Translations under genes and position numbers: made by a program
IMG/VR virus record: IMGVR_UViG_3300044645_002359
Location: 62,001-126,000 of that record
Strand: one strand, 5' to 3'
Length of the DNA: 64,000 nt
The notes under the pieces: model-generated
What the model saw: only the letters and a program-made list of their open reading frames with translations
The model's database searches: none
What the model was told of the DNA's origin: nothing
Shown: positions 4,872 through 37,225 of the stretch, piece after piece
Layout of the letters: each line of letters starts with the position of its first letter
Numbering within the stretch: position 1 is the first letter of the stretch

Positions 4872-4920
4872 TGCGCCGGGGGAGGGTAAAATTGAGGGTA
4901 GGTCTACCCCCCCTTCAGCC

Positions 4921-5904: not shown

Positions 5905-5942
5905 TTTACGGTTTTTTCCGATGAATAATAATAAGTTCAGCG

Positions 5943-10179: not shown

Positions 10180-10214
10180 GTTTAACTTTCAATCTAGACA
10201 ACAATTTCTAAACC

Positions 10215-12987: not shown

Positions 12988-12993
12988 GTCAAA

Positions 12994-13086
12994 CGTTCAG
13001 GCTGCTTCGGCAGCCCGGAAGTAGGTGACAAAGGAACGCATTCGTTCAGTCTGTTTACAGGCCGGGATTGTCTCCAAAGGAACGCG
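12994..13086 (+). ncRNA. Tandem glutamine-riboswitch-like (glnA motif) aptamers
   Basis: Two units CGTTCA-stem-...-AAAGGAACGC (12994-13039, 13043-13085); unit 1 has GGCTGC-TTCG-GCAGCC and CGGAAGTAGG. Confidence 0.72.
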
Positions 13087-13109
13087 CAAAGCAACCCTAG
13101 GAGAACACA

Positions 13110-13229
13110 ATGATTAACACTTCAGACAATTCAACCAAAGGTCTCAACCCTCTGTTTCTTATCAAAAAAAGCCTTATCAAAGAAAGCAAACTCAAAGAAG
13201 CACAGCTTGAGATGGCCAAGAAACCCTAA
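13110..13229 (+). CDS. 39-aa peptide downstream of riboswitch (not in ORF track)
   Basis: AGGAG SD at 13099; MINTSDNSTKGLNPLFLIKKSLIKESKLKEAQLEMAKKP. Confidence 0.72.
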   Translation: MINTSDNSTKGLNPLFLIKKSLIKESKLKEAQLEMAKKP

Positions 13230-20213: not shown

Positions 20214-20301
20214 CCCTTAGGTCGGTTACCGGAGCGGAGTAGATTCAAATTTACTCTGCTTTTATCCAGCTATATTAGAACTGAAGTTTACCAAGAGAGA
20301 A

Positions 20302-20526
20302 ATGACAAACTTTGACGACCTCTTTGAAGCAGTAGAATCTTCTTCATACGACTTGTCCAGAAACCTGGACACCATACGTTATGAAATTGAAGGTCTCACT
20401 AGGGAATATGAGGAACTACTTAATCTGTTGCAAGTTTCTGACCATCAGTCAGCGGTAGAAGCAATTATTTCTCTTAAGTCTAAACGAGATCTTACTGCAC
20501 CTCGGAGAGGATCGGAAACGCTTTAA
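20302..20526 (+). CDS. Hypothetical coiled-coil protein
   Basis: ORF track. Confidence 0.5.
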   Translation: MTNFDDLFEAVESSSYDLSRNLDTIRYEIEGLTREYEELLNLLQVSDHQSAVEAIISLKSKRDLTAPRRGSETL

Positions 20527-20616
20527 CGAAGTCCATATCAAAAGCTAATAACACTTATAGAGACCTTGTGGATTTGAGCTAACTCTCTTTAATTTCACCA
20601 CTATACGACAACAAAC

Positions 20617-20928
20617 ATGACGACTGAACCGCAAGCCGAAAGTGAAGAACAATCCTCTCAGGAAACTTTACAAACAACTGTTACTATCAATCTACCCCCA
20701 GATTTTGCAGAGGCTTTCAACTCTCTGGCAGAACGCGAAGGACTATCTCAAGATGCGCTGGTTATGCGCTCTCTTGGCCTTTACTCCGTAGCATCGCAAG
20801 CTGAGAAGGGGGGTTACGCTTTGTCTTTCACCCGGATTGAAGGAACCAACGACCTGACTGCCAAGGAAGCTATTCGCATCGAAGACGAGCCAGAATCTAA
20901 CTTGTTTATTCCAGGCAAGAGGCAATGA
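20617..20928 (+). CDS. Ribbon-helix-helix (CopG-like) protein
   Basis: VTINLP....F..LAEREGLSQ..LV.R.L.LY. Confidence 0.6.
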   Translation: MTTEPQAESEEQSSQETLQTTVTINLPPDFAEAFNSLAEREGLSQDALVMRSLGLYSVASQAEKGGYALSFTRIEGTNDLTAKEAIRIEDEPESNLFIPGKRQ

Positions 20929-22411
20929 TTCGAGTAGCAATAGCGAAAGAATTGCAGTCTAGAGCTGAACCATTGCGGATCGATAGGGGAACCCTTGAAA
21001 ACTGCCCTCGCAGTGAATACATTGGACAATTCCCCAAGACAACAGATTATGACACTGTCATAGACAAAGACTGTGACGTTTACGTCTCAGGTGTGAAAGT
21101 CTTGTCCTTCCGAAAAGCTCTCTTTCCAATTCTTTCCGAGGGTTCTTCCAAACAGAAAGAAACTTGGGACTTTTTCCGAGCAGCTTCAAAAGAAGTTTAT
21201 GGCACCCAAAGAGGTGTCGTTGCGGGCACAGAGTTTACAACTCGTCCCGAGTCACGCTTAACTAAAGGCCAGGTTGCTTTCTTCGCCGGTGCTTCAGTGG
21301 GTTTGATTACAACGCTTCCTCAAGCGCGAGAGGCTCTGGAAAGTTCCAACGAACTCACTAGCAAGACTCTCAAGATCAAGTATATAAAGAAAGACTACCC
21401 AGAACTTGCGGAAAAATGAAGCCCTTGGAGGCAGAAATTCGCACACTGAGCCCCGAAGACCCGAAACTAGAAAGTCTGAGAAACCAGAGAAGGGAACTAC
21501 TTTGGTGTTGGTTTGAACCTTGGTTACTGGAAGTTTGGTTGCCCTCTGAAAACAAAGTAGAAGAAGTCAAAAAAGTTTTAAACACTTACATTAGCTCTCA
21601 GTTAAATTTCAACCATTGCTACAGTAACGTCCTGGGGGCAATTGACCGTGGGGCAAGATTCCCCTATGGTCGTTTGAGCGGAACCACTCAGAGATACTAT
21701 GAGCAGTTCTCTAAATACAGAGACATTTATTACGCGGCCTGCGAAGGTTTCAGGTACAATTTTCCGGAGACCTGGAGCAAAGTTAAAGAAGTAATTTCGA
21801 AGGCTAAAGACCCTAACTACAACTTGTTCGGCACTGCCTTTACGAGCGTAACTCTAAACTTCAATTTTAAGACTGCCTACCACGTTGACAAGAACAACTT
21901 GAAAGGGGGGCTGGCTGTCTTGACTGCGTTCACAAAGGGAGACTATGAGGGCCACTACTTAGTGTTCCCCGAAGTTAAGCTAGCTTTCAACTTGAGAGAC
22001 GGGGACTTTATCGTAGGAGACACTCAAGTCCTACTTCACGGGAACAGCCCCATGACAAAACTCACTGAGGATGCTGAGCGGGTTTCTCTGGTTTTCTACT
22101 CTCGAGAGAATATGACCCGATTGGACGATCTTGATTGTGAAGAATGCCGAAAACAATTCATGAAGTTTTCACTTCAGTCCCTGAAGGAACGGGGCAAAGA
22201 TCACAAAGACTGGAGGGGCGTGTGGCAAGGAATGTGGACTTCTCAGGAGTGGTTAGACTTTCGAAAAGAAAGAAACTTGGAACACTGTTCAAACTCCAAC
22301 TGGCAGCTTTCTTCGCCTTACGAGAATGAAGTTACGAAAGAGATGAAGCTGTTTAAGGACGATCCAGGTGAGGGATGGAAACTCGTACAAGTATTTACAC
22401 AAGGTCGGTAA
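20925..22411 (+). CDS. TET/JBP-like dioxygenase 2, split by a 1-nt frameshift (20925-21419 + 21416-22411)
   Basis: Colinear paralog of 18726; [17 protein letters not shown]; break in A5 run at 21412-21416. Confidence 0.82.
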
Positions 22412-22476
22412 CCGCCCGGAAGCCTTCGGCTTCCTCCCTTGTTTCTGATCCACATAAACGCTATGATTGTTGTATG
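22406..22476 (+). promoter_or_regulatory. Operator-promoter module copy 5
   Basis: CGGTAACCG; TTGTTT-17-TATGAT-6-ATG(22474). Confidence 0.85.
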
Positions 22477-23058
22477 GAAATCTACTTTAGCACAGACGTT
22501 GAAACTGACGGGCCGATTCCCGGCCCCAACAGCATGCTCTCCCTAGGGTCAGCTGCGTTCTCCTCTTCAGGAAAGCTGCTGGCTACCTTCTCGGTGAACC
22601 TGGAGACCCTCCCCGGAGCCGAGCCGGACCCCTCTACCCAAGCGTGGTGGGAGGCCCACCCAGAGGCTTACAGAGCCTCCAGAGAAGGGACCCTGGCCCC
22701 GGACCAAGCCATGCTTGCCTTTTCACAGTGGGTCACTGCTACGGTCAGCTCGTACACTCAAGCGACTGTTAGAAAAGTTTCTCCAGTATTCGTCGGGTTC
22801 CCTGCAGGTTTTGACTTCCTCTTCGTGTATTGGTACCTTATTAAATTCACAGGGCAATCCCCGTTCAGCTTCTCCGCACTTGACGGTAAGACCTATGCCA
22901 TGGCACTTCTTAAGAAAGGCTACCGGCAATCTACAAAAAAGAACTATCCGAAGGAATGGTTCCCCCCGACTGACAAACACACTCACATTGCTGTGGAAGA
23001 TGCCATCGAGCAGGGTCGTATTTTCTGTAAGATGCTGGCCGCAAATGGACAATCTTGA
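22474..23058 (+). CDS. DEDDh 3'-5' exonuclease
   Basis: [19 protein letters not shown]; start refined by promoter geometry. Confidence 0.85.
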
Positions 23059-23454
23059 AATTTACAACCGTAAGCATAAGCTCGTGCTAGAACTGAGAGA
23101 ACTAGGCGAAGAAGAAGCTGAAGATAGCCTGTTGGAGGAGTTGGACGATCTCTGGCATAAGATGAATGAATCAGACCGTCATAAGGCCCAAGCTTTCACC
23201 TATACTTTGCTTTACGGATCCTCCTTACCCCCTACAATCTCCCATTCAGAAAAGATGAGAGAGTACTCTGGAAAAGTTAATGCATCTTTTAAGGCGCTAC
23301 TGGAAGGGGATATCGAAACTAGTGATACTCTCCTAAAGGAAGTCAGATCGCTATGGGAAGAATTAATCTCAGATGATTTCCCAGAAGAATGATTGAGATC
23401 CTAGCTGCATTCATAGCCTTCGGCTTGTTCATGTTTGTATTATCTGTCCTTTAA
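23045..23454 (+). CDS. Hypothetical (23045-23392) and 21-aa hydrophobic peptide (23389-23454)
   Basis: MDNLEIY...; [21 protein letters not shown] with ATGA overlap. Confidence 0.5.
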
Positions 23455-23466
23455 CTCTCAACCTTA

Positions 23467-24231
23467 ATGAAAGACCCACTCTTCCTTCTCCAAGCCGGAG
23501 GCCCGCTACCCACCGAGAAAATTGCCTGCAGCTTTTCGTGTTATCCAGTGAAGTATTGTCCTTTTTCGGATATCAAGAAGTTAGACCCCAAGGAATCCTT
23601 AACTCAACTTGTCCCAGTAGGTTCCGTAGAGTTTGTTAAAGCTTATAGTGAGCACGTGAGCATCGAGCTTCCCAGGGACTTTTCTTATGGCATTTGCGAC
23701 GGTCAACTTGACCAGTTCCTGATGAGATCTATGCGAAAGGGGACTTACGGTGAGGCAACCCTTATTGATTTTGTCAAACCCATTGAGATAAAGTTTTTCA
23801 CAGGAAATGTAAAAGGGCATCTTGAAATGGAGGCACCGGGGCTCATTCCGAATGATACTCCAGTCTGGGTTACCGAAGCCGTACCCTTCGGAGCCGAATT
23901 TCGCTTCTATATTCACGACTTCATTGGTGGTGGTAAAATCCAAGGTTGGTCTCGATACGATGATTCAAACATGCAATGTTCAGAGCCTGACTTTGGCCTG
24001 GTTGAAGCCGTAATGAAAGAGTTGGAGTACGGGGGTGCTCCAGGTGCCTATACAATTGACATTGGGTGGAGGCCTGATTTAGAACGCTATTGCTTAGTTG
24101 AACTCAATGATGCATGGGCATTAGGATTATACGAAAATGCAGACCCTCAATCTAATCCACCTACCCGACAGCAGTACGCCGATATGTTGGTCTCTCGCTG
24201 GAGACAAATTCTTTTCTGCAGTTTAGTATAA
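23467..24231 (+). CDS. ATP-grasp domain protein (DUF4343/R2K-like)
   Basis: PVGSVEFV, FVKP...K.FTG, EFRFYI, AYTIDIG, LVELND. Confidence 0.8.
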   Translation: MKDPLFLLQAGGPLPTEKIACSFSCYPVKYCPFSDIKKLDPKESLTQLVPVGSVEFVKAYSEHVSIELPRDFSYGICDGQLDQFLMRSMRKGTYGEATLIDFVKPIEIKFFTGNVKGHLEMEAPGLIPNDTPVWVTEAVPFGAEFRFYIHDFIGGGKIQGWSRYDDSNMQCSEPDFGLVEAVMKELEYGGAPGAYTIDIGWRPDLERYCLVELNDAWALGLYENADPQSNPPTRQQYADMLVSRWRQILFCSLV

Positions 24232-24890
24232 TGTGTGCTTTATTCGGATGTGACCTAGAAGAAGTCACGCAAAACAACATCCAAACAATACAACGCATTG
24301 CTCTTGAATCACAGGTCAGAGGCAAACATGCTACTGGCATCTCCTACATTGGAAAAAACGGTCTTGAGACAATCACTGAGCCTGTTTGTGCACAGGAATT
24401 TCTGAACATCTATGACATAAATGTTTGTGTCTCAGACGGCTGTCTGACTTTGATCGGTCATTGCCGCTATTCTACCTCTGATATTCGGTATAACCAGCCG
24501 CTAACGAACGGATCTCTTGCTATTGCTCACAATGGTGTCATTGAGCAGTCGCCTCCAGAGACTTGGACAAAGTTTGGGTACCAGCTAGAAACCACCAACG
24601 ATTCAGAGCTTGTGCTTCGAGCTATCGAAAATAAAGAACAACCCCTGAAAAAGTTTCCTGAAGCTTCTATGGCTGTCTTGGAGCTAAGAGAGACTGGCTC
24701 CATGCGCTATTACCGCAATGGTAAGAGACCTTTATGGAAGAGCGAAGTTGAGAACGGTTTTTTCCTCACCTCAACAAAAGACATTGCATTGAGGGCGGGA
24801 TTGAAGAATCCGGTCCGCTGCCTTCCGGGCTTCCTTTACCAAGGGAAGGCAGCAACTAAAATAATTGAAGTTGAAGAGCTGATTGCATGA
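24231..24890 (+). CDS. Class II (Ntn) glutamine amidotransferase
   Basis: N-terminal MC, RG.HATG, GHCRYST, NQP, HNGVI, NDSE. Confidence 0.88.
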   Translation: MCALFGCDLEEVTQNNIQTIQRIALESQVRGKHATGISYIGKNGLETITEPVCAQEFLNIYDINVCVSDGCLTLIGHCRYSTSDIRYNQPLTNGSLAIAHNGVIEQSPPETWTKFGYQLETTNDSELVLRAIENKEQPLKKFPEASMAVLELRETGSMRYYRNGKRPLWKSEVENGFFLTSTKDIALRAGLKNPVRCLPGFLYQGKAATKIIEVEELIA

Positions 24891-25765
24891 CTTACGATCC
24901 TCGAAAGTTTACATATGGTTACGAAATTGAGTGGGGGGATATACCGAGGGATTTCAACATACCTAAGCACTTGGGAACTTGGGAACATGCGGAAACTGAC
25001 ATCCTAAATTTGCACGGGGATTACGCTCTTAGAGCTGTAGATCCTTTGGGAACTGACCCACCCATGGGCGGCGAGATAAACACCAAGCCAACTCATACCT
25101 GGGAAGAGCAAGTTGAGAGAATCATAGAAATTCGCGACATGTTTATCAACGTCGGACACAATCCGACTGCATCTTTGGTGAACCACGGTCACTTACATGT
25201 TTTCGTGCCAGGGCTGAAGGAAGACTTAACAAGCTTACAAAAATTGGTCTCTTACGTTCGAGACAACCAACAACTGACTGTAGAAAAGTGTTACGGTTAC
25301 TATGACGATCCGGACATGAAGGGGGCGGTCAGAGGAGCCAAGACTTACTTGAAGCTCGATGGGGGCAGGTTAATGCCTCAGTACATGATTGATAACATAC
25401 TGAATTTGTCCACGGACTTTAACCACTTGATTAAGTTGCACGCTGCAGGCAAAGATGGTGTGTCAATGGGACGACCGTTCCGGTATGCAATAAACATCTA
25501 CTGTATGAAGCACACAGGTACTGTTGAGTTCCGCTGTTTTAGATCTAGTGTAAATCGCCGAGAGATTGAAGATCAGTTTCGCTTCGTAGAGGCATTCATT
25601 GATGCCGCCCTTAATGATGGTCCACCTGTTGAAACTATTCTTAAAGAGAACAATTATCAGTTCCCCCCTTACGTATGGAACAAGGAACACTGGAATGCTT
25701 GGGCGCTTACCAAGTGGGACAAGTCCAGGGGCAAAAAAGTCAGAAATTACTACGAGGTCCAATGA
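24887..25765 (+). CDS. Putative amidoligase (COOH-NH2 ligase) 1
   Basis: TYGYEIE, GGEINT.P, HLHV, RYAIN, TVEFRCF. Confidence 0.8.
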   Translation: MTYDPRKFTYGYEIEWGDIPRDFNIPKHLGTWEHAETDILNLHGDYALRAVDPLGTDPPMGGEINTKPTHTWEEQVERIIEIRDMFINVGHNPTASLVNHGHLHVFVPGLKEDLTSLQKLVSYVRDNQQLTVEKCYGYYDDPDMKGAVRGAKTYLKLDGGRLMPQYMIDNILNLSTDFNHLIKLHAAGKDGVSMGRPFRYAINIYCMKHTGTVEFRCFRSSVNRREIEDQFRFVEAFIDAALNDGPPVETILKENNYQFPPYVWNKEHWNAWALTKWDKSRGKKVRNYYEVQ

Positions 25766-26712
25766 TTGAGGCTACTTTCGGTGCTGAATATGAACTCGGA
25801 GACGTCAACCGCTTGCTGGAACTGCCTACTGGGGCGAATTGGAACTTTAAAGATCACAGCATTGCCAATTCCACGGGTATCGCAAATGATGAAAAAGCCA
25901 AGTTGTATACCATTGGCGGTGAGATAAACTCCGAGCCAACAGACACAATTGAAGGGCAGTTGAAAATCTGGGAATCTATAAGGGATTCCCAAAGTCAGAT
26001 TCATATTAATCACAGGACCAATTTACACTTACACATTCATGTGCCTGGGTTGAGAGAAGACCTTGGTCGGTTGAAGCGTCTGATGCAATACGTTCAAGAA
26101 CAACAAGACAGGGTCTACCAATTAATAGAACCCTTAGATCCCCCTGAGAAAGAAAATTACAAAACAGCAGCATCTTATAAGGGTGCTATGGATCGTTACA
26201 AGCGCCGTTTAGTTAGTCATCAGAACAGACTCAAACCGGCCCAGGTTAAGTCTTGTATGGAAGCCGTGACTGCTGAAGAGTTTATCAACGGTCACGCACC
26301 GAAAAACAAGAAGGGTGAACCCTTGTGGGCTTTGGCAGTTAGAGGTGGAATCAATATATCTCAACTTCGTGAAACTAATACAATTGAATTCCGGCACTTT
26401 ACACCTACCTTGAGTGCAGAAGAGCTAGAGTGTTGCTTCACTTGGATCCATGAGTTCATGCATGCCGCCTTGGTTACAGGCGAATCTGTCGATGATATCT
26501 ACTCAAGAAAAACCTGGAAGTTCCCACCGTTCGCTGCCTACGACCACGATATCGATGTGGTTTTCCGCTGGACAGACTTGGAAAAGAACAAACGTTCCGA
26601 AGTGAAACAACGACTCGATCGCTTGGCAGAACACTTTGATACTTATTCCCAACCAGCGAGGGATATGTCAGAATTTGTCAGCTCAGAAAGTGGTGGAAAA
26701 CTAGCTCTTTGA
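25762..26712 (+). CDS. Putative amidoligase 2 (paralog)
   Basis: TFGAEYE, GGEINS.P, LHLHIH, RGGIN, TIEFRHF; ATGA overlap. Confidence 0.8.
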   Translation: MIEATFGAEYELGDVNRLLELPTGANWNFKDHSIANSTGIANDEKAKLYTIGGEINSEPTDTIEGQLKIWESIRDSQSQIHINHRTNLHLHIHVPGLREDLGRLKRLMQYVQEQQDRVYQLIEPLDPPEKENYKTAASYKGAMDRYKRRLVSHQNRLKPAQVKSCMEAVTAEEFINGHAPKNKKGEPLWALAVRGGINISQLRETNTIEFRHFTPTLSAEELECCFTWIHEFMHAALVTGESVDDIYSRKTWKFPPFAAYDHDIDVVFRWTDLEKNKRSEVKQRLDRLAEHFDTYSQPARDMSEFVSSESGGKLAL

Positions 26713-27088
26713 TTTGCTGAGCTACTGCGCGATGCATTTCTTCACCCTTGTGTCTGAATGGGTCTTCAACGTTCCAGTTTCGAACCTTCAACGGATCCAC
26801 AGAAAAGTTCTTGTTTATACGGTCTACGTGCAAATGAGACATGCAAATGACTTGGTCCGCCCAGTCCAACAAGTCTTGAGAGTAAGGTTGTGCGATGTGT
26901 TGCTCACCACTGTAGCCCATCTCTGCCAAAACTCGTCTCATTTTGGGAGCCATTCTTGAGCGGTCCACAGCTTGTTTAGAAGTGCCACACGAATCTACTT
27001 TGTACAATCCCGTATTATGAAAACTAAGGATAACATGAGCAGCAGCACTACGATTCACACACCCTGTACAAATAAAGAGTACTTTCAT
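26678..27088 (-). CDS. LMW phosphatase / arsenate-reductase fold protein
   Basis: VLFICTGCVNRS (CX5R), WAD.VICM, EDPF. Confidence 0.88.
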   Translation of the reverse strand: MKVLFICTGCVNRSAAAHVILSFHNTGLYKVDSCGTSKQAVDRSRMAPKMRRVLAEMGYSGEQHIAQPYSQDLLDWADQVICMSHLHVDRINKNFSVDPLKVRNWNVEDPFRHKGEEMHRAVAQQIKELVFHHFLS

Positions 27089-27136
27089 GTTCAGTGCCTA
27101 TAATAAGTATGCATAACCTTACCCTAATGCTTCGTC

Positions 27137-27793
27137 ATGTACTATGTATACAAAATAACTTTCGAAGAGGTACCCCACTTTTACATTGGAATTCGCAAGT
27201 GCCCACCCCTTATAGCACCACAGGAGGATAAATACTTGGGAAGCCCTTGCACACACCGGTCTTATTGGAAAATATACACACCCAAAAAACATATAATGCA
27301 TTGCTACGAGAGTCAAGAAGAGGCTTACCAGGTGGAGCACACCCTTATTATACAGAACTGGAAGAATAAGTATTCCTTGAACAGAGGGGTTGCAGGAGCT
27401 GTACACGAAGAGATATTATCGAATAATGGCAAAAGAGTGGCACAACTCTGGCACAACCGGGTTGAAGAGGACCACAAATTAAGAGAGTGGGCAACGGAAA
27501 ATGCTAGAAAATGTTTGTCTGGGTATCATGAGAGACGTCAGGAGAACGAGGAGGAAAACGAAAGATTTCTAAGTCAATGTTCCGAGAACGGGAAGAGAAC
27601 AGGAGCCTCTAACATAGGCAAATATAACGAAAGAAAAGATGAGCTGGAGTATATAAGAGTAAGAAAAGAGAACGGCAGGAACCGAAAAGGCATGATTTGG
27701 ATTAACAACGGCTCAGAAAATAAAGTGGTCTGGCCGCACATGATGGAGGAGTACTCTACCCGGGGATACAAAAGAGGTAGGAAACATGCTTGA
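27137..27793 (+). mobile_element. Free-standing GIY-YIG-like homing endonuclease
   Basis: YVYKIT...FYIG, D.YLGS, E..LI, SLN; C-terminal WINNG..NK. Confidence 0.7.
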
Positions 27794-28802
27794 AGTTACA
27801 GCTTGCTCATCAGACTACAGATTGTTGGAGAATAGAAGGGAGGGTTTTTTGCAATGGTGGATTGCCTCAACGGCGGCACTTGACGTCGACCCCAGCATGT
27901 GGATGATGAGGTACTTAAACGACCGTTATGAGCATAGCACCGAAGAGAAGCTTTGGTTCGCTTGGCTGTTCCACACATATAATTTACCCACATGTTGGAC
28001 CCTGAAGCAAGAATTTCCAGACGAAGAGCTGGCAAGCGTGGAAAGATTCGACACTTTCGTTGGTGAAAATTACCCTCGAATTCGTCATGAAAAAGACACT
28101 AAGTGGTCGCGTGGACACCTGGCAGCAATGTATGCGAGTTACCATGATTGGGTTGGTGAGAGTACTCAGAGAGACAAGTTCTGGGAACTGTGCCAAGGCT
28201 CCCCCGAAGAGAACTTTTGGGCAATCTGGAATTTGGTTATGGAGAAGTTTTTCAAGTTCGGCCGGTACACCACTTTCTTTTACTTACAAACTCTTAAGCA
28301 AACTTGCAATTTGCCTTTAGACTGTCCCTCTCTATTTTTGAGCGATTACTCTGGCAGTAAAAGCCATAGAAATGGCCTGTGTTTTGCTGCCGGCAAAGAC
28401 GATTGGGTCAACCAAAAATTGACTCCCGCAGAGTACTCTTGGCTAGAGGGCTTCGGTGCTGACTTGCTTGTAGAAGCATATTCGCGGTGGCCCGACTTCA
28501 AAGGCGACATGGACAACTTCGCCCTTGAAACCTGTCTGTGCTCATACAAAAAAGTTTTCCGGACAGCTAACGGTCGTTATGTCAATTATTACAACGATCG
28601 AGTCTCTGAGCAAATTGCCAAGGCAGAAGGAGATGGTTGGTCAGGTATTGACTGGAATGTTTTGCATCAGTGCCGCAGCGAATGCTCCAACGGGCGTCTT
28701 CGTAAAAAAGACAAAATTGACAAAACGAAAATGCACCTTTTCATGGAGCGTGGAACTTTTCATTTTCTGTGGCACGATGGGGAACTGTCTCAGCTTACTT
28801 AG
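27786..28802 (+). CDS. aGPT-pyrophosphorylase clade 2-like amino acid:DNA transferase
   Basis: KFGRYTTFFYLQTL, SHRNGL, LETCLCSYKK, GRY..YY.DR. Confidence 0.78.
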   Translation: MLEVTACSSDYRLLENRREGFLQWWIASTAALDVDPSMWMMRYLNDRYEHSTEEKLWFAWLFHTYNLPTCWTLKQEFPDEELASVERFDTFVGENYPRIRHEKDTKWSRGHLAAMYASYHDWVGESTQRDKFWELCQGSPEENFWAIWNLVMEKFFKFGRYTTFFYLQTLKQTCNLPLDCPSLFLSDYSGSKSHRNGLCFAAGKDDWVNQKLTPAEYSWLEGFGADLLVEAYSRWPDFKGDMDNFALETCLCSYKKVFRTANGRYVNYYNDRVSEQIAKAEGDGWSGIDWNVLHQCRSECSNGRLRKKDKIDKTKMHLFMERGTFHFLWHDGELSQLT

Positions 28803-28854
28803 AGCTGAAGAAGCTATACTGACTTTGTAACCAACTTTCTCTTTGCATTCACGT

Positions 28855-29343
28855 ATGAAACTGACACATTACTTCGGAGTTCCAGGGTGCGGCAAAACCA
28901 CTCTGATGCGCAACAAACTTAGTGTCCTTGAAGCCAATGAGCCGGGGGAAAACGTACAAGAAGGACTCGTCAGATACCACAAGTTTGAAAAACAAAAAAC
29001 TATCGTGCTAGGGGTGTACGACGATAGCACTTTCGCTGGTTTAGACAAACTTTCAAAAGGGGTTGGTCCAAAGTTCCGTCAATGGCTGTTAGACAACGCA
29101 GAAAAGTATAAGGGTTGGGAAGTTTTCTCAGAAGGAGAAAGATTCTCTAACAACCCCACTCTAGACGCAATGTTTGCTACAGGGAACATGACACTTGTGC
29201 TTGTCCAGGTTAGCGACGAAGAACTTGAGAAAAGAAGAGCAGCTAGGAACAATACCCAAAATGAGACTTGGATGAAAGGTATGCAAACTCGGATGAATAA
29301 CCTTGCCCAAAAGTATACTCACACCGTGCTCAACAACGACTGA
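28855..29343 (+). CDS. P-loop nucleotide kinase of the type linked to aGPT-PPase2
   Basis: GVPGCGKTT, GVY...FAG.D.LS, EGERF.N, R..R...Q...W.KG..T. Confidence 0.75.
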   Translation: MKLTHYFGVPGCGKTTLMRNKLSVLEANEPGENVQEGLVRYHKFEKQKTIVLGVYDDSTFAGLDKLSKGVGPKFRQWLLDNAEKYKGWEVFSEGERFSNNPTLDAMFATGNMTLVLVQVSDEELEKRRAARNNTQNETWMKGMQTRMNNLAQKYTHTVLNND

Positions 29344-29350
29344 AACTTCA

Positions 29351-29866
29351 ATGTCAAACTCTCAAGAAATTATTGAAAAACTGAAAGACCAGATTGCTTT
29401 TCTGACCGCCGAACTTAACCGGGTTGAGCAAAAGTCCAATTCTTTATGGGGCCAATTACAAGACGCTTTCCTTCAAGAAGGGAATGATTTAGAAAATGCA
29501 AACTTCTGGGCAGACCGAATTTCACAGATTTTTTCTACATGGGTCCATAGTCAGAGAACCAACCTCACTCAGAGAATTGTATCAACGGGCGTAATGCCTC
29601 CCTACACTGACTGCCTTAACGATTTGGTCGTAAGTATTTCCCCTCCGGGGTCTACACCACCGAGTTTGCCCCCTGAATTTGCAGAATTAGCTAACACTCC
29701 TGTAGTTGGACCTACCCTCGCAACTCCAAGTTTTGATAGACCCGCCTACGAAGGGCTCTCAGCAGATGCTCAGATTGGCCCACCGAAGCAACGGAAAATT
29801 GGTGTCCCGAAACCCATTCCTGGGGCAGTCCCCTTGCCGTTACCTCCCTTGACTGGAGCAGATTGA
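29351..29866 (+). CDS. Hypothetical protein, Pro-rich C-terminus
   Basis: ORF track; start refined to MSNSQ. Confidence 0.5.
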   Translation: MSNSQEIIEKLKDQIAFLTAELNRVEQKSNSLWGQLQDAFLQEGNDLENANFWADRISQIFSTWVHSQRTNLTQRIVSTGVMPPYTDCLNDLVVSISPPGSTPPSLPPEFAELANTPVVGPTLATPSFDRPAYEGLSADAQIGPPKQRKIGVPKPIPGAVPLPLPPLTGAD

Positions 29867-29927
29867 AAGACTGTCTGAAATGATTGCTGAAGTGAGGGTA
29901 AAAAATTAGGAAATTTACCCGTAGGAA

Positions 29928-31271
29928 ATGTCAAAAGAGAGTCAACCACAAAAAGACCCAATATTGCAATCGATCCGAATTGCCCTAGACGCCGTTAAAT
30001 CAGCAGGCAGCACAGGAAAGCCGGGTATCCCGCCTACAACAGGGACAAGGCTGATGGCTCTTCTATCCGTTGCAATGTTAAACACTTTGGCGTCCTTTGA
30101 CAGAAGTGTAAAGCCCTACTTCAAATCTAGCAAAGCACTTAATGGTGCAAATCAAAGTGCGGCCATCCTGGGAGCAGCCCAAAGGATTTTGTTGAGGGGA
30201 ATTCCCGGTGAATCGCGACTTATCTATTCTGAGTTTGCCAAGGCATTTCGGGGGTTGAAGCTCAAGTCGGTGAAAGACTTAATAAGTGTAAAATTCGGGG
30301 TTGAAATTGCCGACAAGGTGATAGCCTCAAGGTCGCAAGATGGGTCTGAAAATCAAACTCCGCTTAACAGCAACGGAAACCCTCAGGATTATTTATGGAA
30401 ACCCGCGACATCTGGCCCCACTGCTGGGATCGCACTTGGGGTTAATTGGGGCTCGGTTAAGCCGTGGGTCATTGGGAGTACCAGTGCGTACCAGACAGAT
30501 GGCTTGAATGCTAGGCCAGGCGCGAATTTAGAAGCATATGCCCAGCAATTAGCAGAAGTGAGGTTGTTCGGGGGCTTAAATGATACATCCCTCACCAAGA
30601 CTCAACGCACAGAGAACCAGACGCATATCGCTAAGTTCTGGGCCTATGACCGAGCTGATACGTTCCGCCCCTACGGACAACTCCTAGACATTGCCTCTGA
30701 GATAGCAGCAAACCAGAAAACAAGCACTCAGACCAATGCCAAATTGTTCGCAAGCTTGAGCATGGCAATGGCTGACTCCGTGATTTGTGCGTGGAACGAG
30801 AAGTACAAAGTCCTGCAACCACGACCCTATGACGTTATTACCGGGGCGTTTTCTGATAAGGATGGGACACCGATCACTGTTCGCGACTCCGAGTGGCAAT
30901 CTCTCTTGTCATCTATCAATGGTGTTCAATCGCCACCGTTTCCAGATTTCTTATCGGGGCACTCAGCCATGGGTGGAGCCTTCGCCAGCGTAATGACTCA
31001 CTTTTTCGGAGACAAGCTAGTCTTCTCGACCCAATCCCAGGATTTACCAGGTTTTACAAGAACTTTCGATGGTAGTATACCTGCAGGTTCTCTTGGTGAC
31101 ATTGGCCTTATCGTGAACTCACCAATATACCGCCCAAATAGCTTCTACGAAGCTGGAATTGAGGATGCTGTTAGCCGTGTGTATGGAGGAGTCCATGTAC
31201 GGGAAGCCTGCCTTGACTCCTTTAATCTGGGGGTCAAAGTCGGTATTGCGGCTGTCTTGTGGGGTCGGTAA
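29928..31271 (+). CDS. Vanadium-dependent haloperoxidase-like (PAP2 superfamily)
   Basis: KYKVLQPRP (KX6RP), PPFPDFLSGHS, SRVYGGVH. Confidence 0.85.
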   Translation: MSKESQPQKDPILQSIRIALDAVKSAGSTGKPGIPPTTGTRLMALLSVAMLNTLASFDRSVKPYFKSSKALNGANQSAAILGAAQRILLRGIPGESRLIYSEFAKAFRGLKLKSVKDLISVKFGVEIADKVIASRSQDGSENQTPLNSNGNPQDYLWKPATSGPTAGIALGVNWGSVKPWVIGSTSAYQTDGLNARPGANLEAYAQQLAEVRLFGGLNDTSLTKTQRTENQTHIAKFWAYDRADTFRPYGQLLDIASEIAANQKTSTQTNAKLFASLSMAMADSVICAWNEKYKVLQPRPYDVITGAFSDKDGTPITVRDSEWQSLLSSINGVQSPPFPDFLSGHSAMGGAFASVMTHFFGDKLVFSTQSQDLPGFTRTFDGSIPAGSLGDIGLIVNSPIYRPNSFYEAGIEDAVSRVYGGVHVREACLDSFNLGVKVGIAAVLWGR

Positions 31272-31335
31272 ACCGCCTAGAACAGTTCTGTTTCCACCCT
31301 TGTCTCCGAGTCCCGGAAGCGCTATAATTAGAGTA
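31266..31335 (+). promoter_or_regulatory. Operator-promoter module copy 6
   Basis: CGGTAAACCG; TTGTCT-17-TATAAT; short leader with GGGAG. Confidence 0.82.
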
Positions 31336-31350
31336 TAAAGGGAGAGATCA

Positions 31351-31983
31351 GTGGAAACCTGCACCAAATATCCCCGCACCTTGCACCTTCCGTGGTCCCT
31401 GAGCGTAACATCCGATGATAAGGTTGTGCCTTCGGTCGCTCATTTTAGGGGCCGCCAAGTGATTGTGACCGAAAAGATGGACGGAGAGAATACGACCATG
31501 TACCGCAACCATATTCATGCCAGAAGCCTGGATAGCAAAGGTGGTGAGGACAGGGCTTGGGTCAAGCAGTTTTGGGGGTCAATCCGAAATGAAATCCCTG
31601 AAGGGTGGCGAATCTGTGGTGAAAACCTATGGGCTTGCCATAGCGTCCAATACACCGATCTGAAATCATATTTCTATGGGTTTAGCATATGGGATAGCCA
31701 CAACATTGCCCTACCCTGGAGTGACACTTTAGAGTATTTTTCTATGCTCGGAATAAAACCTGTACCCGTTCTCTGGGGCGGTAAATGGAATGAACTCGCA
31801 ATCCGCAGTCTCTGCGATACCCTAAACCCAGATCAAACCGAAGGCTACGTCGTTCGCCTTGCTGACTCCTTTCATTACGATGATTTTGGTATGTCAGTGG
31901 CTAAGTTTGTTCGTGCCAACCATGTTCGTGCCAACAAGCACTGGCGGTCACAGCAATTTGTTGCCAATGGCCTAGCTGTCTGA
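31351..31983 (+). CDS. RNA ligase family protein
   Basis: KYPRT.HLPWS, TEKMDGEN, EGYVVR, AKFVR. Confidence 0.88.
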   Translation: METCTKYPRTLHLPWSLSVTSDDKVVPSVAHFRGRQVIVTEKMDGENTTMYRNHIHARSLDSKGGEDRAWVKQFWGSIRNEIPEGWRICGENLWACHSVQYTDLKSYFYGFSIWDSHNIALPWSDTLEYFSMLGIKPVPVLWGGKWNELAIRSLCDTLNPDQTEGYVVRLADSFHYDDFGMSVAKFVRANHVRANKHWRSQQFVANGLAV

Positions 31984-32023
31984 CCCTAACATCCTGATCT
32001 TCAAGTACAAAACCAAAACCAAA

Positions 32024-32548
32024 ATGGCAACCACATACAAACCACCCGCACCACTCCCGCCGAAATGGCAGGGCTACAGCGTTTTTCTCGCCGGATCCAT
32101 CGAAATGGGTGCTGCTCCTAATTGGCAAGCCGAGGTAGAACGCAACCTTGCCGGTCTTGACATCGATATCTTCAATCCTCGCCGCGACAACTGGGACCCA
32201 ACATGGATGCAAAGCGCAGACAATCCCCAGTTCCGTGAACAAGTCGAGTGGGAACTTGATACCCTAGATAGGGCCAACTTGGCCGTGATGTATTTAGTAC
32301 CGGGAACCCTGAGCCCGATATCGTTATTGGAACTTGGGATTTATGCTGCCAAGGAGAGAAATAAGCTGATTGTATGCTGCCCTGAAGGCTTCCACCGAAA
32401 GGGTAACGTTGACATTGTTTGCGAGCGATACGGCGTCAAGCAAGTTGCTTCCCTAGATGAGCTTACGGACGCTATTCGGACTCGGTATTCTGAGTGGCAA
32501 ATGATATGGGAAGAATGTGGGTTTGGCAACCGGGTGATCCATCTCTAA
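32024..32548 (+). CDS. Nucleoside 2-deoxyribosyltransferase-like protein
   Basis: VFLAGSIEMG..W, FNPRR, QVEWE, SPISLLELG. Confidence 0.85.
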   Translation: MATTYKPPAPLPPKWQGYSVFLAGSIEMGAAPNWQAEVERNLAGLDIDIFNPRRDNWDPTWMQSADNPQFREQVEWELDTLDRANLAVMYLVPGTLSPISLLELGIYAAKERNKLIVCCPEGFHRKGNVDIVCERYGVKQVASLDELTDAIRTRYSEWQMIWEECGFGNRVIHL

Positions 32549-32944
32549 ATAAATGACAACTCCATTCAACCAACCACCCCATCTCCCTGACTTCGATGAT
32601 ATGGACCCTGACGGGTGCATTGAAATCCTACTGGGCGAAGACGAGGATGGCTATCAACATCTGGACTATCAGCATGTGAGCCACTATAGGGACGATTGTA
32701 CCAAACTAGGTAGGACTCGACCCTGGAGACGAACCAAAGAATGGACTCCCAAAAATCCGGAGTACACCGATGCTGATTTCGCCTGGGCATTGAGCCGGGT
32801 CTTGAAAAACATTAGAACCACCTACGACCTAAAGAGTCTCAAAATTGGACTTACCGATGAGGAGTGTGGCCGCATTATGCTTATGAGAGAACAAGCTAAT
32901 AAGAAGTCTTCCACCCAAGCTAACTAACCTGAACGTCAAAGGGT

Positions 32945-32993
32945 CGGTAAACCGCCCTATACACCCAGGCAGGAACACCCTATAATACACTGA
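32945..32993 (+). promoter_or_regulatory. Short variant of operator-promoter
   Basis: CGGTAAACCG-ccc-TATACA-17-TATAAT. Confidence 0.7.
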
Positions 32994-33008
32994 GACCCAA
33001 CCATAAAA

Positions 33009-33491
33009 ATGCAAACCCCGAGCAAAATGCAAAAAGGCGAACAGCTAAACAAGATGCTGGTTCTGGCAACCAATGCCCATGCCGGTCAGTATGACAAAGG
33101 CGGAAACCCCTACATCCTTCACCCGCTGAAGGTAATGTATTTCCTAAAATCAGACGACGAAGACCTCCAGTGCATTGCGCTTGGTCACGACATTATCGAA
33201 GATACCAAGGTGACGTATGCGGATCTCCGAGAGCAAGGATTCACCCATCGGGTAATCGAAGGCATCCGCGCCCTTACTAAGCTTCCGGGGGAAACCTACG
33301 ATGAATACAAGCACCGAGTCTTTGCCAATGAGGATGCAATGAGGGTGAAACTCTGCGACCTCCGACATAACACCGATGTGCGCCGCCTCAAAGGTGTAAC
33401 CGAGAAGGATATTGCTCGAATGGCGAAGTACCATGTTTTCTACATGGAGATTATGGCTAGACTACAGGATATTGACGGAGGTGAATTTTGA
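33009..33491 (+). CDS. HD-domain small alarmone hydrolase-like protein
   Basis: HAGQYDKGGNPYILHP, HDIIEDT, VKLCDLRHN. Confidence 0.85.
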   Translation: MQTPSKMQKGEQLNKMLVLATNAHAGQYDKGGNPYILHPLKVMYFLKSDDEDLQCIALGHDIIEDTKVTYADLREQGFTHRVIEGIRALTKLPGETYDEYKHRVFANEDAMRVKLCDLRHNTDVRRLKGVTEKDIARMAKYHVFYMEIMARLQDIDGGEF

Positions 33492-36145: not shown

Positions 36146-37225
36146 ATGACAACAATCCTATACCACCCATTCTCCAAGCTCCACAACCCAACTTACAACC
36201 ACCCGGACAACCCTGCTCGAATTGATGCAATTCTAGAAGCAATCAAGCCGTACCGCACTCAGCGGCCACTGCGCCCAGCCACCTTCGAGGAAATTGCCAC
36301 AGTTCATACGCCAGATTACATCCGCAGCGTCCTCAAACAGCAAGGCCAGAAAGGATCCGCAGGACCCGGAGCACTATTAACTGAACATTCAGTCGATGCT
36401 GCCTTGTGGAGTGCTGGGGCTGCGATTGAAGCTGCCGATGTGGCCATGGGTGAAGATGCCGCCGTAGCACTATGCCGTCCTGCAGGCCATCACGCCCGCC
36501 CCCATACAGGGATGGGTTTTTGCGTATTTAACAACGTTGCCATCGCTGCAGCCCACTGCCTGGCCAAAGGGGCGGAAAGAGTCTTCATCCTGGATTGGGA
36601 TGTCCACCATGGTAATGGCACCCAGGAGATTTTCTACGAGAGCGACAAAGTGTTTTTCTTCTCAATTCATCAGAAGTCGGCTTACCCTTCTTCAGGAACA
36701 AGCGAAGAAATGGGGGATGGGGCCGGACTTGGCTTCAATCGTAACATTGTCTTGGAAGAAGAATCCGACGATAACGATTACCTATTTTGCATCAAGGAAA
36801 TTGTGGTTCCAGTCATTCGAGACTTCGACCCCCAAGTCATCCTAATATCGGCCGGATTTGACGCGCATAGGGATGACCCTCTGTCCAATATGGCAATGAC
36901 GAGTTCCGGTTATGGGGAAATGACTCAGCAAATCTGGGAAATTGCCCAAGAGTTAGATATTGGCTTAGCCCTGATTCTAGAGGGCGGTTACTCAATACAT
37001 TCCCTCGGTGGCTGCATTGCAAGTTGCCTCGATGCCCTGCCAGAACCTACCCTATTTGGGGAGGAAACTACGGGGCCAGACCCCGCCCTCCTAGAGTCAA
37101 TGGCAATGCGATACCGCCACGATTTCGGATTGCTTGACTCTAAGCACCAAGCTGCTATACTAGTAACGATGCGGCAGCTTTGGGAAGAGGTTGCTGGCGT
37201 CGGATTTTATCGGCCCCTTAGTTAA
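36146..37225 (+). CDS. Zn-dependent histone-deacetylase-family enzyme with extra C-terminal segment
   Basis: HPDNPARI, RPAGHHA, GFCVFNN, DWDVHHGNGTQ, SAGFDAH.DDPL, LEGGY. Confidence 0.93.
   Translation: MTTILYHPFSKLHNPTYNHPDNPARIDAILEAIKPYRTQRPLRPATFEEIATVHTPDYIRSVLKQQGQKGSAGPGALLTEHSVDAALWSAGAAIEAADVAMGEDAAVALCRPAGHHARPHTGMGFCVFNNVAIAAAHCLAKGAERVFILDWDVHHGNGTQEIFYESDKVFFFSIHQKSAYPSSGTSEEMGDGAGLGFNRNIVLEEESDDNDYLFCIKEIVVPVIRDFDPQVILISAGFDAHRDDPLSNMAMTSSGYGEMTQQIWEIAQELDIGLALILEGGYSIHSLGGCIASCLDALPEPTLFGEETTGPDPALLESMAMRYRHDFGLLDSKHQAAILVTMRQLWEEVAGVGFYRPLS

What the first reader, a model, noticed from the sequence alone, without database searches (positions are those of the whole stretch)
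29928..31271. Phage-encoded vanadium haloperoxidase-like enzyme next to the modification locus
All three vanadate/phosphate-binding motifs are present in a 447-aa soluble protein. Such enzymes occur in some cyanobacteria, but I rarely associate them with phages. Possible roles are H2O2 removal, halogenation or anti-grazer chemistry, or acid-phosphatase activity. Upstream is an inverted repeat GGGTAAA...TTTACCC (29896-29920).
Basis: partly seen in the sequence, partly recalled or inferred. Interest (0 to 1): 0.6.

Follow-up and report, generated by a model that had tools for sequence, protein, structure and literature searches.

The report
Cyanophage-encoded vanadium-haloperoxidase-family enzyme
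A large lake phage that infects tiny cyanobacteria carries an intact copy, apparently taken from its host lineage, of an enzyme of the vanadium haloperoxidase family; if it is active it would be the first such enzyme known from a bacteriophage and only the second kind of virus-encoded halogenating enzyme.

Summary
The ORF is real: 29928-31271 (+), 447 aa, with no signal peptide and no membrane helix. It is not a generic PAP2 phosphatase. A family profile matches Zobellia vanadium iodoperoxidase (E 1e-68) and Curvularia chloroperoxidase (E 3.5e-57) over the full length. The AlphaFold model (pLDDT 90) has their two-helical-bundle fold (TM 0.73-0.78).

All first- and second-shell residues of the chloroperoxidase vanadate site are present: D241, W289, K292, R299, F338, S343-G344-H345, R417, H423.

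The window lies in a 201-kb IMG/VR jumbo-phage record from lake water. The gene nests inside a clade of freshwater Cyanobium/Synechococcaceae chromosomal genes (56-63% identity). The phage copy lacks the cell copies' N-terminal beta-sandwich domains. It has taken on phage base composition (49% GC against 65% in the cells) and is under purifying selection (dN/dS 0.08-0.18).

Relatives occur in at least three phage lineages. One is a psbA-carrying 277-kb relative with no thymidine-modification locus, so the adjacency to that locus looks incidental. The upstream inverted repeat exists but is at chance level.

Whether the activity is haloperoxidase or phosphatase cannot be settled from sequence. 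I favour haloperoxidase.

The parts
29928..31271 (+). Gene for a 447-aa, 48-kDa, pI 9.1 cytoplasmic enzyme of the vanadium haloperoxidase family (VCPO/VIPO type). It is the catalytic core only.
   Evidence: ORF. Pfam PAP2 scores 29.1 bits against a cutoff of 27.2. PDB phmmer gives 4cit E 3e-15 and VCPO E 9e-10. The profile gives 4cit E 1e-68 and VCPO E 3.5e-57. AF2 pLDDT is 90.4. Foldseek gives 4usz TM 0.73/0.78.
29955..30569 (+). N-terminal helical bundle (about residues 10-214), the domain that single-bundle acid phosphatases lack.
   Evidence: AF2 helices H11-27, H36-55, H76-91, H93-109, H115-134 and H201-214. The profile alignment to VIPO/VCPO covers this part. Acid phosphatases align only to the other half.
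30612..31262 (+). C-terminal helical bundle (about residues 229-445), carrying the vanadate/phosphate site. It includes D241 in the FWAYD segment, W289 and F338.
   Evidence: Pfam PAP2 covers 277-445 and VCPO_2nd covers 273-440. Residue mapping to Curvularia VCPO D292, W350 and F397 comes from the HMMER alignments. Conservation is shown.
30801..30827 (+). Motif 1, K292-YKVLQP-R299-P300 (equivalent to VCPO K353...R360).
   Evidence: Invariant in 35 diverse relatives and in all phage and host copies.
30954..30962 (+). Motif 2, S343-G344-H345 (equivalent to VCPO S402-G403-H404). H345 is the acid-base histidine.
31173..31196 (+). Motif 3, S416-R417-VYGGV-H423 (equivalent to VCPO R490...H496). H423 is the predicted vanadate ligand, or the phosphohistidine nucleophile.
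29896..29920 (+). 7-bp inverted repeat with an 11-nt loop in the 61-bp intergenic spacer. Chance-level; not treated as a functional part.
   Evidence: z = -0.74 against shuffles. Not conserved in sister phage L002. No terminator or promoter call here.

Best explanation
The gene is an auxiliary, host-derived enzyme of freshwater picocyanobacterial phages. It is the bare catalytic core of a vanadium-haloperoxidase-family protein, and its cellular counterparts in Cyanobium/Synechococcus carry extra N-terminal beta-sandwich (CARDB-like, SWM-repeat or Ig-like) domains. SHOWN: (1) the two-bundle VCPO/VIPO fold; (2) a complete vanadate/phosphate pocket with its second shell; (3) a position in the tree inside the picocyanobacterial clade; (4) phage-like base composition; (5) purifying selection; (6) recurrence in several phage lineages. 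INFERRED mechanism: made in the infected cell's cytoplasm, the enzyme binds orthovanadate covalently at H423. K292, R299, S343/G344 and R417 hold the oxyanion. H2O2 forms a peroxovanadate that K292 and H345 activate. A halide held near W289/F338 is oxidised to hypohalous acid. The result is that H2O2 is consumed and nearby organic matter is halogenated or oxidised during infection or after lysis. Confidence differs by level. Membership of the family with host origin is about 0.9. That the native activity is halide oxidation rather than phosphoester hydrolysis is about 0.5, and that is the figure given.
For: Family and fold:
- Profile against PDB gives Zobellia VIPO E 1e-68 and Curvularia VCPO E 3.5e-57, both full length.
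- Every significant full-length Foldseek hit is a VHPO or a VHPO homologue (VIPO, VCPO, NapH3, NapH1, XhnO11). Acid phosphatases cover only the C-terminal half.

Active site:
- D241, W289, K292, R299, F338, S343, G344, H345, R417 and H423 match VCPO D292, W350, K353, R360, F397, S402, G403, H404, R490 and H496 (alignments).
- VCPO mutant structures exist for D292A, R360A, H404A and H496A (one search list), and Hemrika 1999 is cited in PMC11871015.
- These residues are identical in 8 phage and 6 host copies. W289, K292, R299, G344, H345 and H423 are invariant in 35 diverse relatives.

Host origin:
- About 45 Cyanobium/Synechococcaceae MAG loci at 56-63% identity lie among core genes such as rsmH, ndhH, fabI, hisB, pgm and ruvB.
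- The phage copies nest inside that clade.

Domestication in the phage:
- The gene is 49.3% GC against 46.9% for the phage and 65-66% for host copies, whose GC3 is 0.82-0.85.
- dN/dS is 0.137 against the sister phage and 0.08-0.18 among the others.

Recurrence:
- Sister contigs L002/L003.
- A jumbo cyanophage of 277 kb, 98% complete, with psbA and a terminase 86% identical to this phage's.
- Phage-like contigs L007 and L013.
- A third clade in 88-90-kb genomes with terminases.

Assembly: an independent lake run bridges 29806-30070 with no differences.
Against: - No assay exists for this subfamily. The nearest characterised enzyme shares only about 21% identity.
- The same pocket binds phosphate, and apo-VCPO hydrolyses phosphoesters (PDB 3bb0).
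- From established knowledge: a cytoplasmic enzyme meets millimolar phosphate and only trace vanadate, which favours the phosphate-bound or apo form. Fresh water is also poor in bromide and iodide.
- NapH3 shows that VHPO homologues can have lost halogenation.
- A single-sequence Pfam VCPO_2nd hit is below its cutoff (16.7 against 27 bits). There is no NCBIfam or PHROG family.
- No RNA run holds the gene, so expression has not been shown.
Confidence: 0.5

Rival explanations
1. It works as a phosphatase. The pocket binds phosphate esters, H423 forms a phosphohistidine and H345 protonates the leaving group. This frees phosphate for phage DNA synthesis in phosphorus-poor lakes, in the same way as other cyanophage phosphate-acquisition genes.
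For: The PAP2 superfamily hit is above its cutoff. The catalytic residues are shared with acid phosphatases, and apo-VCPO traps a phosphate intermediate (3bb0). The protein is cytoplasmic, where phosphate greatly outweighs vanadate (plus general knowledge). NCBI names some cell homologues 'phosphatase PAP2 family' or 'phosphoesterase'. MazG-type pyrophosphohydrolase genes lie just upstream in two other phage contexts.
Against: The full two-bundle architecture and the second-shell residues W289, F338 and D241 are those of haloperoxidases. Solved acid phosphatases match only half of the model, with TM 0.22-0.32 normalised to the query. The third motif lacks the Asp of HxxxD (HVREA). From general knowledge, the phosphatase activity of apo-VHPOs is very slow. 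The database names are automatic.
Confidence: 0.3
2. It is a component of the neighbouring thymidine-hypermodification pathway, for example removing phosphate from 5-phosphomethyl-dU intermediates or halogenating or oxidising bases in phage DNA.
For: It lies 585 bp downstream of the P-loop nucleotide kinase 3 and ADDT genes, on the same strand, with no promoter-like site in between. The same order is kept in the sister phage.
Against: Four related phage records with the VHPO-like gene (G001-G004, including the 98%-complete G001) have no ADDT. In them, and in L007 and L013, the neighbours are unrelated. The sister phage has two genes (a 162-aa ORF and a fatty-acid desaturase) inserted between the locus and this gene. 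The cellular homologues sit among housekeeping genes.
Confidence: 0.05
3. It has diverged to another chemistry or a non-catalytic role, like NapH3, which keeps the fold but not halogenation. Or it acts outside the cell after lysis or on the virion.
For: It is only about 21% identical to characterised enzymes. The phage branches are long (0.43-0.47). Other phage clades keep N-terminal CARDB-like or SWM-repeat domains; such beta-sandwich domains on phage proteins are often virion-exposed (general knowledge).
Against: Every catalytic and second-shell residue is strictly kept under purifying selection in all copies, which argues for retained oxyanion chemistry. The window's copy has no extra domain that could anchor it.
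Confidence: 0.12
4. It is an artefact: a cyanobacterial gene joined to a phage contig by misassembly, or a cellular contig mislabelled as viral.
For: One IMG/VR contig (L008) carries a copy almost identical to the Cyanobium gene, with cell-like GC of 65%. Logan's contigs of the probable source run break at 29916-29928.
Against: The gene's GC and GC3 match the phage, not the cells. Phage genes flank it on both sides in three independent assemblies. An independent run's contig spans the junction 29806-30070 with no differences. The record has a terminase 86% identical to that of a 98%-complete phage.
Confidence: 0.02

Closest known systems
Zobellia galactanivorans vanadium iodoperoxidase (PDB 4CIT/4USZ)
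   Same: Best sequence and fold match: E 3e-15 with the single sequence, 1e-68 with the profile, TM 0.73/0.78. It is a monomer-sized two-helical-bundle protein of about 450 aa. K, R, S-G-H, R, H, W and F of the vanadate site are all aligned.
   Different: Only about 21% identity. The Zobellia enzyme has FWDCN plus an insert where this protein has FWAYD (D241), as in the fungal chloroperoxidase. It comes from a marine flavobacterium, not a phage. Halide preference here is unknown.
Curvularia inaequalis vanadium chloroperoxidase (PDB 1VNC, 1IDQ and others)
   Same: All ten first- and second-shell residues are conserved, including D292 (here D241), W350 (W289) and F397 (F338). Both bundles are homologous.
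   Different: The fungal enzyme is a secreted protein of 609 aa with long insertions. Identity is 18-20%.
Uncharacterised chromosomal homologues of freshwater Cyanobium/Synechococcaceae (for example Cyanobium sp. LBMAG41_11600)
   Same: 56-63% identical over the whole catalytic core, with an identical active site. This is the clade in which the phage gene nests.
   Different: The cell proteins are 545-770 aa, with N-terminal CARDB-like, SWM-repeat or Ig-like domains that the phage copy lacks. They are 65% GC against 49%. Their function has not been tested either.
VirX1, flavin-dependent halogenase of cyanophage Syn10
   Same: The only halogenating enzyme characterised from a virus, and also from a cyanophage (PMC8407142; PMC8213229).
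   Different: An unrelated fold and chemistry (FAD and O2, regioselective), from a marine T4-like phage.
Class A bacterial non-specific acid phosphatases (PAP2; for example E. blattae 1IW8, PhoC 9QCJ)
   Same: The same KX6RP / SGH / SRX5H oxyanion site and the same C-terminal bundle.
   Different: They are single-bundle proteins of about 210-230 aa and, from general knowledge, are periplasmic. They match only half of the model, and the Asp of HxxxD is absent here.
Klosneuvirus KNV1 uncharacterised protein A0A1V0SKZ4
   Same: The only full-length fold match among UniProt viral proteins (TM 0.80, E 4e-22).
   Different: It comes from a giant virus of eukaryotes, at 22% identity, and is uncharacterised.

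Membership tests
Vanadium-dependent haloperoxidases (VCPO/VIPO type) | Two homologous helical bundles in one chain of about 450-600 aa | tested here: met
   AF2 model pLDDT 90.4, pTM 0.92. Foldseek to 4usz/4cit gives TM 0.73/0.78, and VCPO TM is about 0.7. The profile alignment covers both domains.
Vanadium-dependent haloperoxidases (VCPO/VIPO type) | Axial histidine that binds vanadate (VCPO H496) | tested here: met
   H423 is aligned to H496 of VCPO and to the corresponding His of VIPO (chain position 424). It is invariant in 35 relatives and in all phage and host copies.
Vanadium-dependent haloperoxidases (VCPO/VIPO type) | Oxyanion cage K353, R360, S402, G403, R490 and catalytic H404 | tested here: met
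   K292, R299, S343, G344, R417 and H345.
Vanadium-dependent haloperoxidases (VCPO/VIPO type) | Second-shell residues of the chloro/iodoperoxidase type (W350, F397, D292) | tested here: met
   W289, F338 and D241. They are conserved in all phage and host copies. W289 is invariant and F338 and D241 are at least 90% conserved in the wider family.
Vanadium-dependent haloperoxidases (VCPO/VIPO type) | Curated family model passed | tested here: inconclusive
   With the single sequence, Pfam VCPO_2nd scores 16.7 bits against a cutoff of 27, while PAP2 passes with 29.1 against 27.2. PF22778 is precomputed for nearly all close homologues. There is no NCBIfam hit.
Vanadium-dependent haloperoxidases (VCPO/VIPO type) | Vanadate binding and H2O2-dependent halide oxidation | not testable with these tools
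   Needs purified protein, vanadate reconstitution and thymol-blue or monochlorodimedone assays.
Class A acid phosphatases (PAP2) | Motifs KX6RP, PSGH and SRX5HX3D | tested here: inconclusive
   The first two are present (LSGH instead of PSGH). The third reads SRVYGGVHVREA, with no Asp at +4.
Class A acid phosphatases (PAP2) | Single-bundle, exported protein of about 230 aa | tested here: not met
   447 aa, two bundles, no signal peptide. The acid phosphatases align to only about 250 columns.
Membrane PAP2 lipid phosphatases | Six transmembrane helices | tested here: not met
   No hydrophobic segment; the highest 19-residue Kyte-Doolittle mean is 1.36.
Phage auxiliary metabolic genes of host origin | Sits in a bona fide phage genome between phage genes, nests within the host clade, and is maintained by selection | tested here: met
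   Virus record with terminase. Synteny in independent assemblies. Tree. GC amelioration. dN/dS 0.08-0.18. Expression was not shown.

The most novel reading that the evidence does not exclude
The protein is an active vanadium haloperoxidase made by lake cyanophages. That would make it the first vanadium enzyme and the first haloperoxidase of any bacteriophage. Infection of picocyanobacteria would then become a sink for H2O2 and a source of hypohalous acid and organohalogens in fresh water. The repeated retention of the gene in at least three phage lineages would reflect a fitness benefit, such as control of oxidative stress in hosts or chemical warfare around lysing cells.
Probability: 0.4. 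Interest if true: 0.75.

Novelty: new member of a known kind. Interest (0 to 1): 0.58.

Why it matters
The only halogenating enzyme characterised from a virus so far is the flavin-dependent VirX1 of a marine cyanophage. A vanadium-type enzyme in phages would be a second, mechanistically different class, and the first link between phages and vanadium biochemistry.

The gene is kept intact in several unrelated freshwater cyanophage lineages. That points to a real benefit during infection of picocyanobacteria, the dominant small primary producers of lakes.

If it consumes H2O2 or makes hypohalous acid, viral infection would affect oxidative stress, dissolved organic matter chemistry and halogen cycling. 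Such effects are already suspected for algal viruses (PMC8213229). If it is instead a phosphatase, it adds a new fold to the phosphate-scavenging genes of cyanophages.

Either way, the compact 447-aa core is a convenient entry point for characterising a large, untested subfamily. That subfamily has about 4,400 clusters at 50% identity, and its members are often embedded in giant surface proteins.

Tried and rejected
- NCBIfam and PHROGs gave no usable family for the protein.
- Megablast of 16 kb of the window against 50,697 phage records found nothing. tblastn found only one weak hit, MT835866, at 24.7% identity.
- The inverted repeat was folded, compared with shuffles and aligned with the sister phage. 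It is at chance level and not conserved, so it was rejected as a regulatory element. The promoter/terminator scan found nothing in the spacer.
- A functional link to the thymidine-modification locus was tested by looking for ADDT in four related phage records that carry the gene. It was absent from all four, so a required link was rejected.
- Neighbours of six cellular paralogues were scanned for a functional hint such as a phosphate regulon, peroxide genes or a biosynthetic cluster. Only housekeeping genes turned up, which is uninformative.
- Independent acquisitions by the phage clades were tested with an AU test. A single phage clade is not rejected (p 0.54; the constrained tree is 3 lnL better), so the number of transfers stays open.
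- The expression search found only DNA lake-water runs and no RNA. Read laying had only contigs, so there is no information on depth or transcripts.
- Literature searches for a phage or Cyanobium vanadium haloperoxidase found nothing relevant.
Full report
OBSERVATION. A sister phage at 89% identity keeps the same start and N-terminus.

The three PAP2/haloperoxidase motifs are present:
- K292-x6-R299-P300 (nt 30801-30827);
- S343-G344-H345 (nt 30954-30962);
- S416-R417-x5-H423 (nt 31173-31196).

The protein is 48 kDa with pI 9.1. It has no hydrophobic segment (maximum 19-residue Kyte-Doolittle mean 1.36) and no signal peptide.

The inverted repeat GGGTAAA/TTTACCC at 29896-29920 exists, but it is a weak AT-rich hairpin:
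- -7.1 kcal/mol, z = -0.74, and 47 of 200 shuffles fold as well;
- no T-run follows it;
- it is disrupted in the sister phage.
By my own back-of-envelope estimate, about 60 such 7-bp repeats are expected by chance in 64 kb. I treat it as chance.

WHAT THE PROTEIN IS. Single-sequence searches are modest:
- Pfam PAP2 scores 29.1 bits, just over its cutoff of 27.2;
- Pfam VCPO_2nd is below its cutoff, at 16.7 against 27 bits;
- NCBIfam and PHROGs return nothing.

Against solved structures, however, every significant hit is a vanadium haloperoxidase: Zobellia iodoperoxidase 4CIT at E 3e-15 and Curvularia chloroperoxidase at E 9e-10.

A profile of 35 diverse relatives (A2) matches 4CIT at E 1e-68 and VCPO at E 3.5e-57 over the full length. 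It also matches other VHPOs (9PTR, XhnO11) and VHPO homologues (NapH3, NapH1).

The AlphaFold model built on that alignment is confident (pLDDT 90.4, pTM 0.92). Foldseek ranks 4USZ/4CIT first (TM 0.73/0.78), then VCPO, NapH3, NapH1 and XhnO11. Bacterial acid phosphatases align only to the C-terminal half. So this is the soluble two-bundle VCPO/VIPO architecture. It is neither a membrane PAP2 nor a class A phosphatase.

ACTIVE SITE. Reading the HMMER alignments, the correspondence with Curvularia VCPO is:

| This protein | VCPO |
|---|---|
| D241 | D292 |
| W289 | W350 |
| K292 | K353 |
| R299 | R360 |
| F338 | F397 |
| S343-G344-H345 | S402-G403-H404 |
| R417 | R490 |
| H423 | H496 |

- H496, K353, R360 and R490 are the mutagenised active-site residues of VCPO (Hemrika et al. 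1999, cited in PMC11871015).
- Structures of the D292A, R360A, H404A and H496A mutants are in the PDB hit list.
- Position F338 is Phe, as in chloro- and iodoperoxidases. From my own knowledge, algal bromoperoxidases have His there.
- All eleven positions checked are identical in eight phage and six cellular copies.
- W289, K292, R299, P300, G344, H345 and H423 are invariant across 35 distant relatives.
- The third motif reads HVREA, so it lacks the Asp of the phosphatase HxxxD signature.

THE GENOME AROUND IT. The window is bases 62001-126000 of a 201,260-bp IMG/VR virus record, estimated 71% complete. Almost all genes are on one strand. There are three tRNA genes and a large-terminase-like gene.

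Upstream lies a thymidine-hypermodification-type locus:
- two Tet/JBP dioxygenases;
- an R2K ATP-grasp protein;
- a glutamine amidotransferase;
- an amidoligase-like protein;
- a low-molecular-weight phosphatase on the minus strand;
- an amino-acid:DNA transferase (ADDT);
- a P-loop nucleotide kinase 3.

A homing endonuclease is inserted in this locus. Between the kinase and the VHPO-like gene is a proline-rich ORF of unknown function; its likely start is 29351, which gives 171 aa as in the sister phage. Downstream lie an RNA ligase, a nucleoside deoxyribosyltransferase-like gene and an HD-domain gene.

Two independent assemblies of a sister phage (L002, L003) have the same order. They also have two extra genes, a 162-aa ORF and a fatty-acid desaturase, inserted directly upstream of the VHPO-like gene.

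The stretch occurs only in lake-water or freshwater metagenome runs. Two runs hold half or more of its sampled words, and the rest hold only small shares. No RNA run holds it. A contig of an independent run bridges 29806-30070 without a difference. The Logan contigs of the probable source run break at 29916-29928, next to that variable spot.

ORIGIN. About 45 loci in freshwater Cyanobium / Synechococcaceae MAGs encode proteins 56-63% identical over the catalytic core, often as two or three paralogues per genome. The next relatives fall off sharply: Crocosphaera at 39%, Nostocales at about 33%, Planctomycetes at about 28%.

The cellular genes sit among core genes: RPE65, a FAD monooxygenase, hisB, fabI, rsmH, ndhH, pgm and ruvB. 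The cellular proteins are 545-770 aa, because they carry N-terminal CARDB-like, SWM-repeat or Ig-like domains without a classical signal peptide. The window's protein begins right at the catalytic core.

In the wider family, the domain is often embedded in giant proteins of 1,000-6,600 aa. There are 4,401 clusters at E below 1e-3. I infer, without having shown it, that the cellular enzymes are surface-exposed or secreted.

In maximum-likelihood trees the picocyanobacterial sequences form a strongly supported clade, and the phage copies nest inside it as two groups:
- window + L002 + L007;
- L009/L010/L012/L014 + L013.

A third phage group (L081-L084) is sister to the whole clade. L008 is essentially a Cyanobium sequence and is probably cellular. 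An AU test does not reject a single clade of the eight nested phage copies (p 0.54), so one or several transfers are possible.

The window's gene is 49.3% GC (GC3 0.49), like its phage at 46.9% and unlike the cellular copies at 65-66% (GC3 0.82-0.85). Each other phage copy likewise matches its own contig. dN/dS is 0.137 against the sister phage and 0.08-0.18 among the other phage pairs. The gene is therefore an old, maintained resident of phage genomes.

IS IT TIED TO THE MODIFICATION LOCUS? No.
- The record behind L010 (G001) is 277 kb and 98% complete. Its terminase is 86% identical to this phage's, and it carries psbA, so it is a related jumbo cyanophage.
- G001 carries a VHPO-like gene of 558 aa with an N-terminal SWM repeat. 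Its neighbours are a MazG-like gene, a radical-SAM gene and an EF-Ts gene.
- G001, and three further fragmentary records with the gene, have no ADDT.
- L007 (DnaB, MazG, cytidylyltransferase) and L013 (AAA_25 helicase-like, YqaJ) are yet other phage contexts.
- The third clade sits in genomes of 88-90 kb, 89-96% complete, with terminases. A more distant copy with a lipoprotein-type signal peptide is in a complete 88-kb genome with terminal repeats.

MECHANISM. Shown: the fold, the site, the origin, selection and recurrence. Inferred from the well-studied VCPO mechanism:
1. Vanadate is bound to H423 and caged by K292, R299, S343/G344 and R417.
2. H2O2 gives a peroxovanadate that is activated by K292 and H345.
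3. A halide near W289/F338 is oxidised to hypohalous acid.

The net effect would be consumption of H2O2 plus halogenation or oxidation of nearby compounds. The main rival is phosphoester hydrolysis through phospho-H423, as in apo-VCPO (PDB 3bb0). A cytoplasmic location with abundant phosphate and little vanadate would favour that rival (general knowledge).

My estimates are:

| Reading | Probability |
|---|---|
| Haloperoxidase | about 0.5 |
| Phosphatase | about 0.3 |
| Other or diverged chemistry | about 0.12 |
| Role in DNA modification | about 0.05 |
| Artefact | about 0.02 |

COMPARISON AND NOVELTY. The protein meets every sequence and structure criterion of the VCPO/VIPO-type haloperoxidases that can be tested here. 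Activity itself cannot be tested.
- It is a new, uncharacterised subfamily, about 21% identical to the nearest characterised enzyme.
- Among 50,697 deposited phage genomes only one weak relative exists.
- Among UniProt viral structures, only a Klosneuvirus protein has the full fold.
- No paper in the library describes a phage or Cyanobium enzyme of this kind.
- The only characterised viral halogenase is the unrelated flavin enzyme VirX1.

I therefore rate it as a new member of a known kind, an auxiliary gene of host origin, with moderate-to-good interest.

LIMITS. No alternative genetic code was used. The trees are 'quick' searches with SH-aLRT support only. The phage rows have long branches and unusual composition, so the exact number and direction of transfers is uncertain.

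Noticed in passing
window 18726-29343: A thymidine-hypermodification-type locus: two Tet/JBP dioxygenases (18726-20213, 21416-22411), an R2K ATP-grasp (23467-24231), a GATase (24231-24890), two paralogous amidoligase-like ORFs (24887-25765, 25675-26712), LMW phosphatase on the minus strand (26678-27088), amino-acid:DNA transferase ADDT (27786-28802) and P-loop nucleotide kinase 3 (28843-29343). This suggests amino-acid-decorated thymidine in this jumbo cyanophage's DNA.
   Followed up: partly
window 27137-27793: A homing endonuclease (phrog_314, E 3e-9; no Pfam hit) is inserted between the LMW phosphatase and ADDT genes. It is absent at that place in the sister phage L002/L003.
   Followed up: partly
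window 36146-37225: A strong histone-deacetylase-family gene (PF00850, E 1.6e-86, 359 aa) in a phage genome. It could be a deacetylase or acetylpolyamine amidohydrolase.
   Followed up: no
window 3834-5905: Three tRNA genes: Arg(tct), Ile(tat) and Ser(cga). The Ile(tat) gene is unusually long at 92 nt.
   Followed up: no
window 29866-29928; L002:8682-9918: A variable spot directly upstream of the VHPO-like gene. The sister phage has a 162-aa ORF and a fatty-acid desaturase (PF00487) inserted here, and Logan contigs of the probable source run break at 29916-29928.
   Followed up: partly
L010 (record G001, 277 kb): 12548-13156, 10152-11066; G001:C1:272210-273082: A related, 98%-complete jumbo cyanophage encodes an EF-Ts homologue (PF00889, E 9e-30), a radical-SAM protein and psbA. 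Its VHPO-like protein keeps an N-terminal SWM repeat.
   Followed up: partly
L081-L084, L086, L087: A third phage clade in genomes of about 88-90 kb carries a CARDB-like N-terminal domain fused to the VHPO core (46-48% identity). L087, a complete 88-kb genome with terminal repeats and 62% GC, encodes a distant copy with a lipoprotein-type signal peptide.
   Followed up: partly
L088, L090, L093, L101, L104, L107 and other GVMAG contigs: Many giant-virus MAG contigs in IMG/VR carry distant PAP2/VHPO-like C-terminal domains (22-30% identity). Klosneuvirus protein A0A1V0SKZ4 matches the full fold (TM 0.80).
   Followed up: no
window 31300-31328: The best sigma-70-like promoter match in the region (TTGTCT-17-TATAAT, 10 of 12) lies just after the VHPO-like gene and before the RNA ligase gene. 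This suggests a new transcription unit starts there.
   Followed up: no
window 31351-33491: A downstream trio of RNA ligase (PF09414), nucleoside 2-deoxyribosyltransferase-like (PF15891) and HD_4-domain genes is conserved in the sister phage.
   Followed up: no
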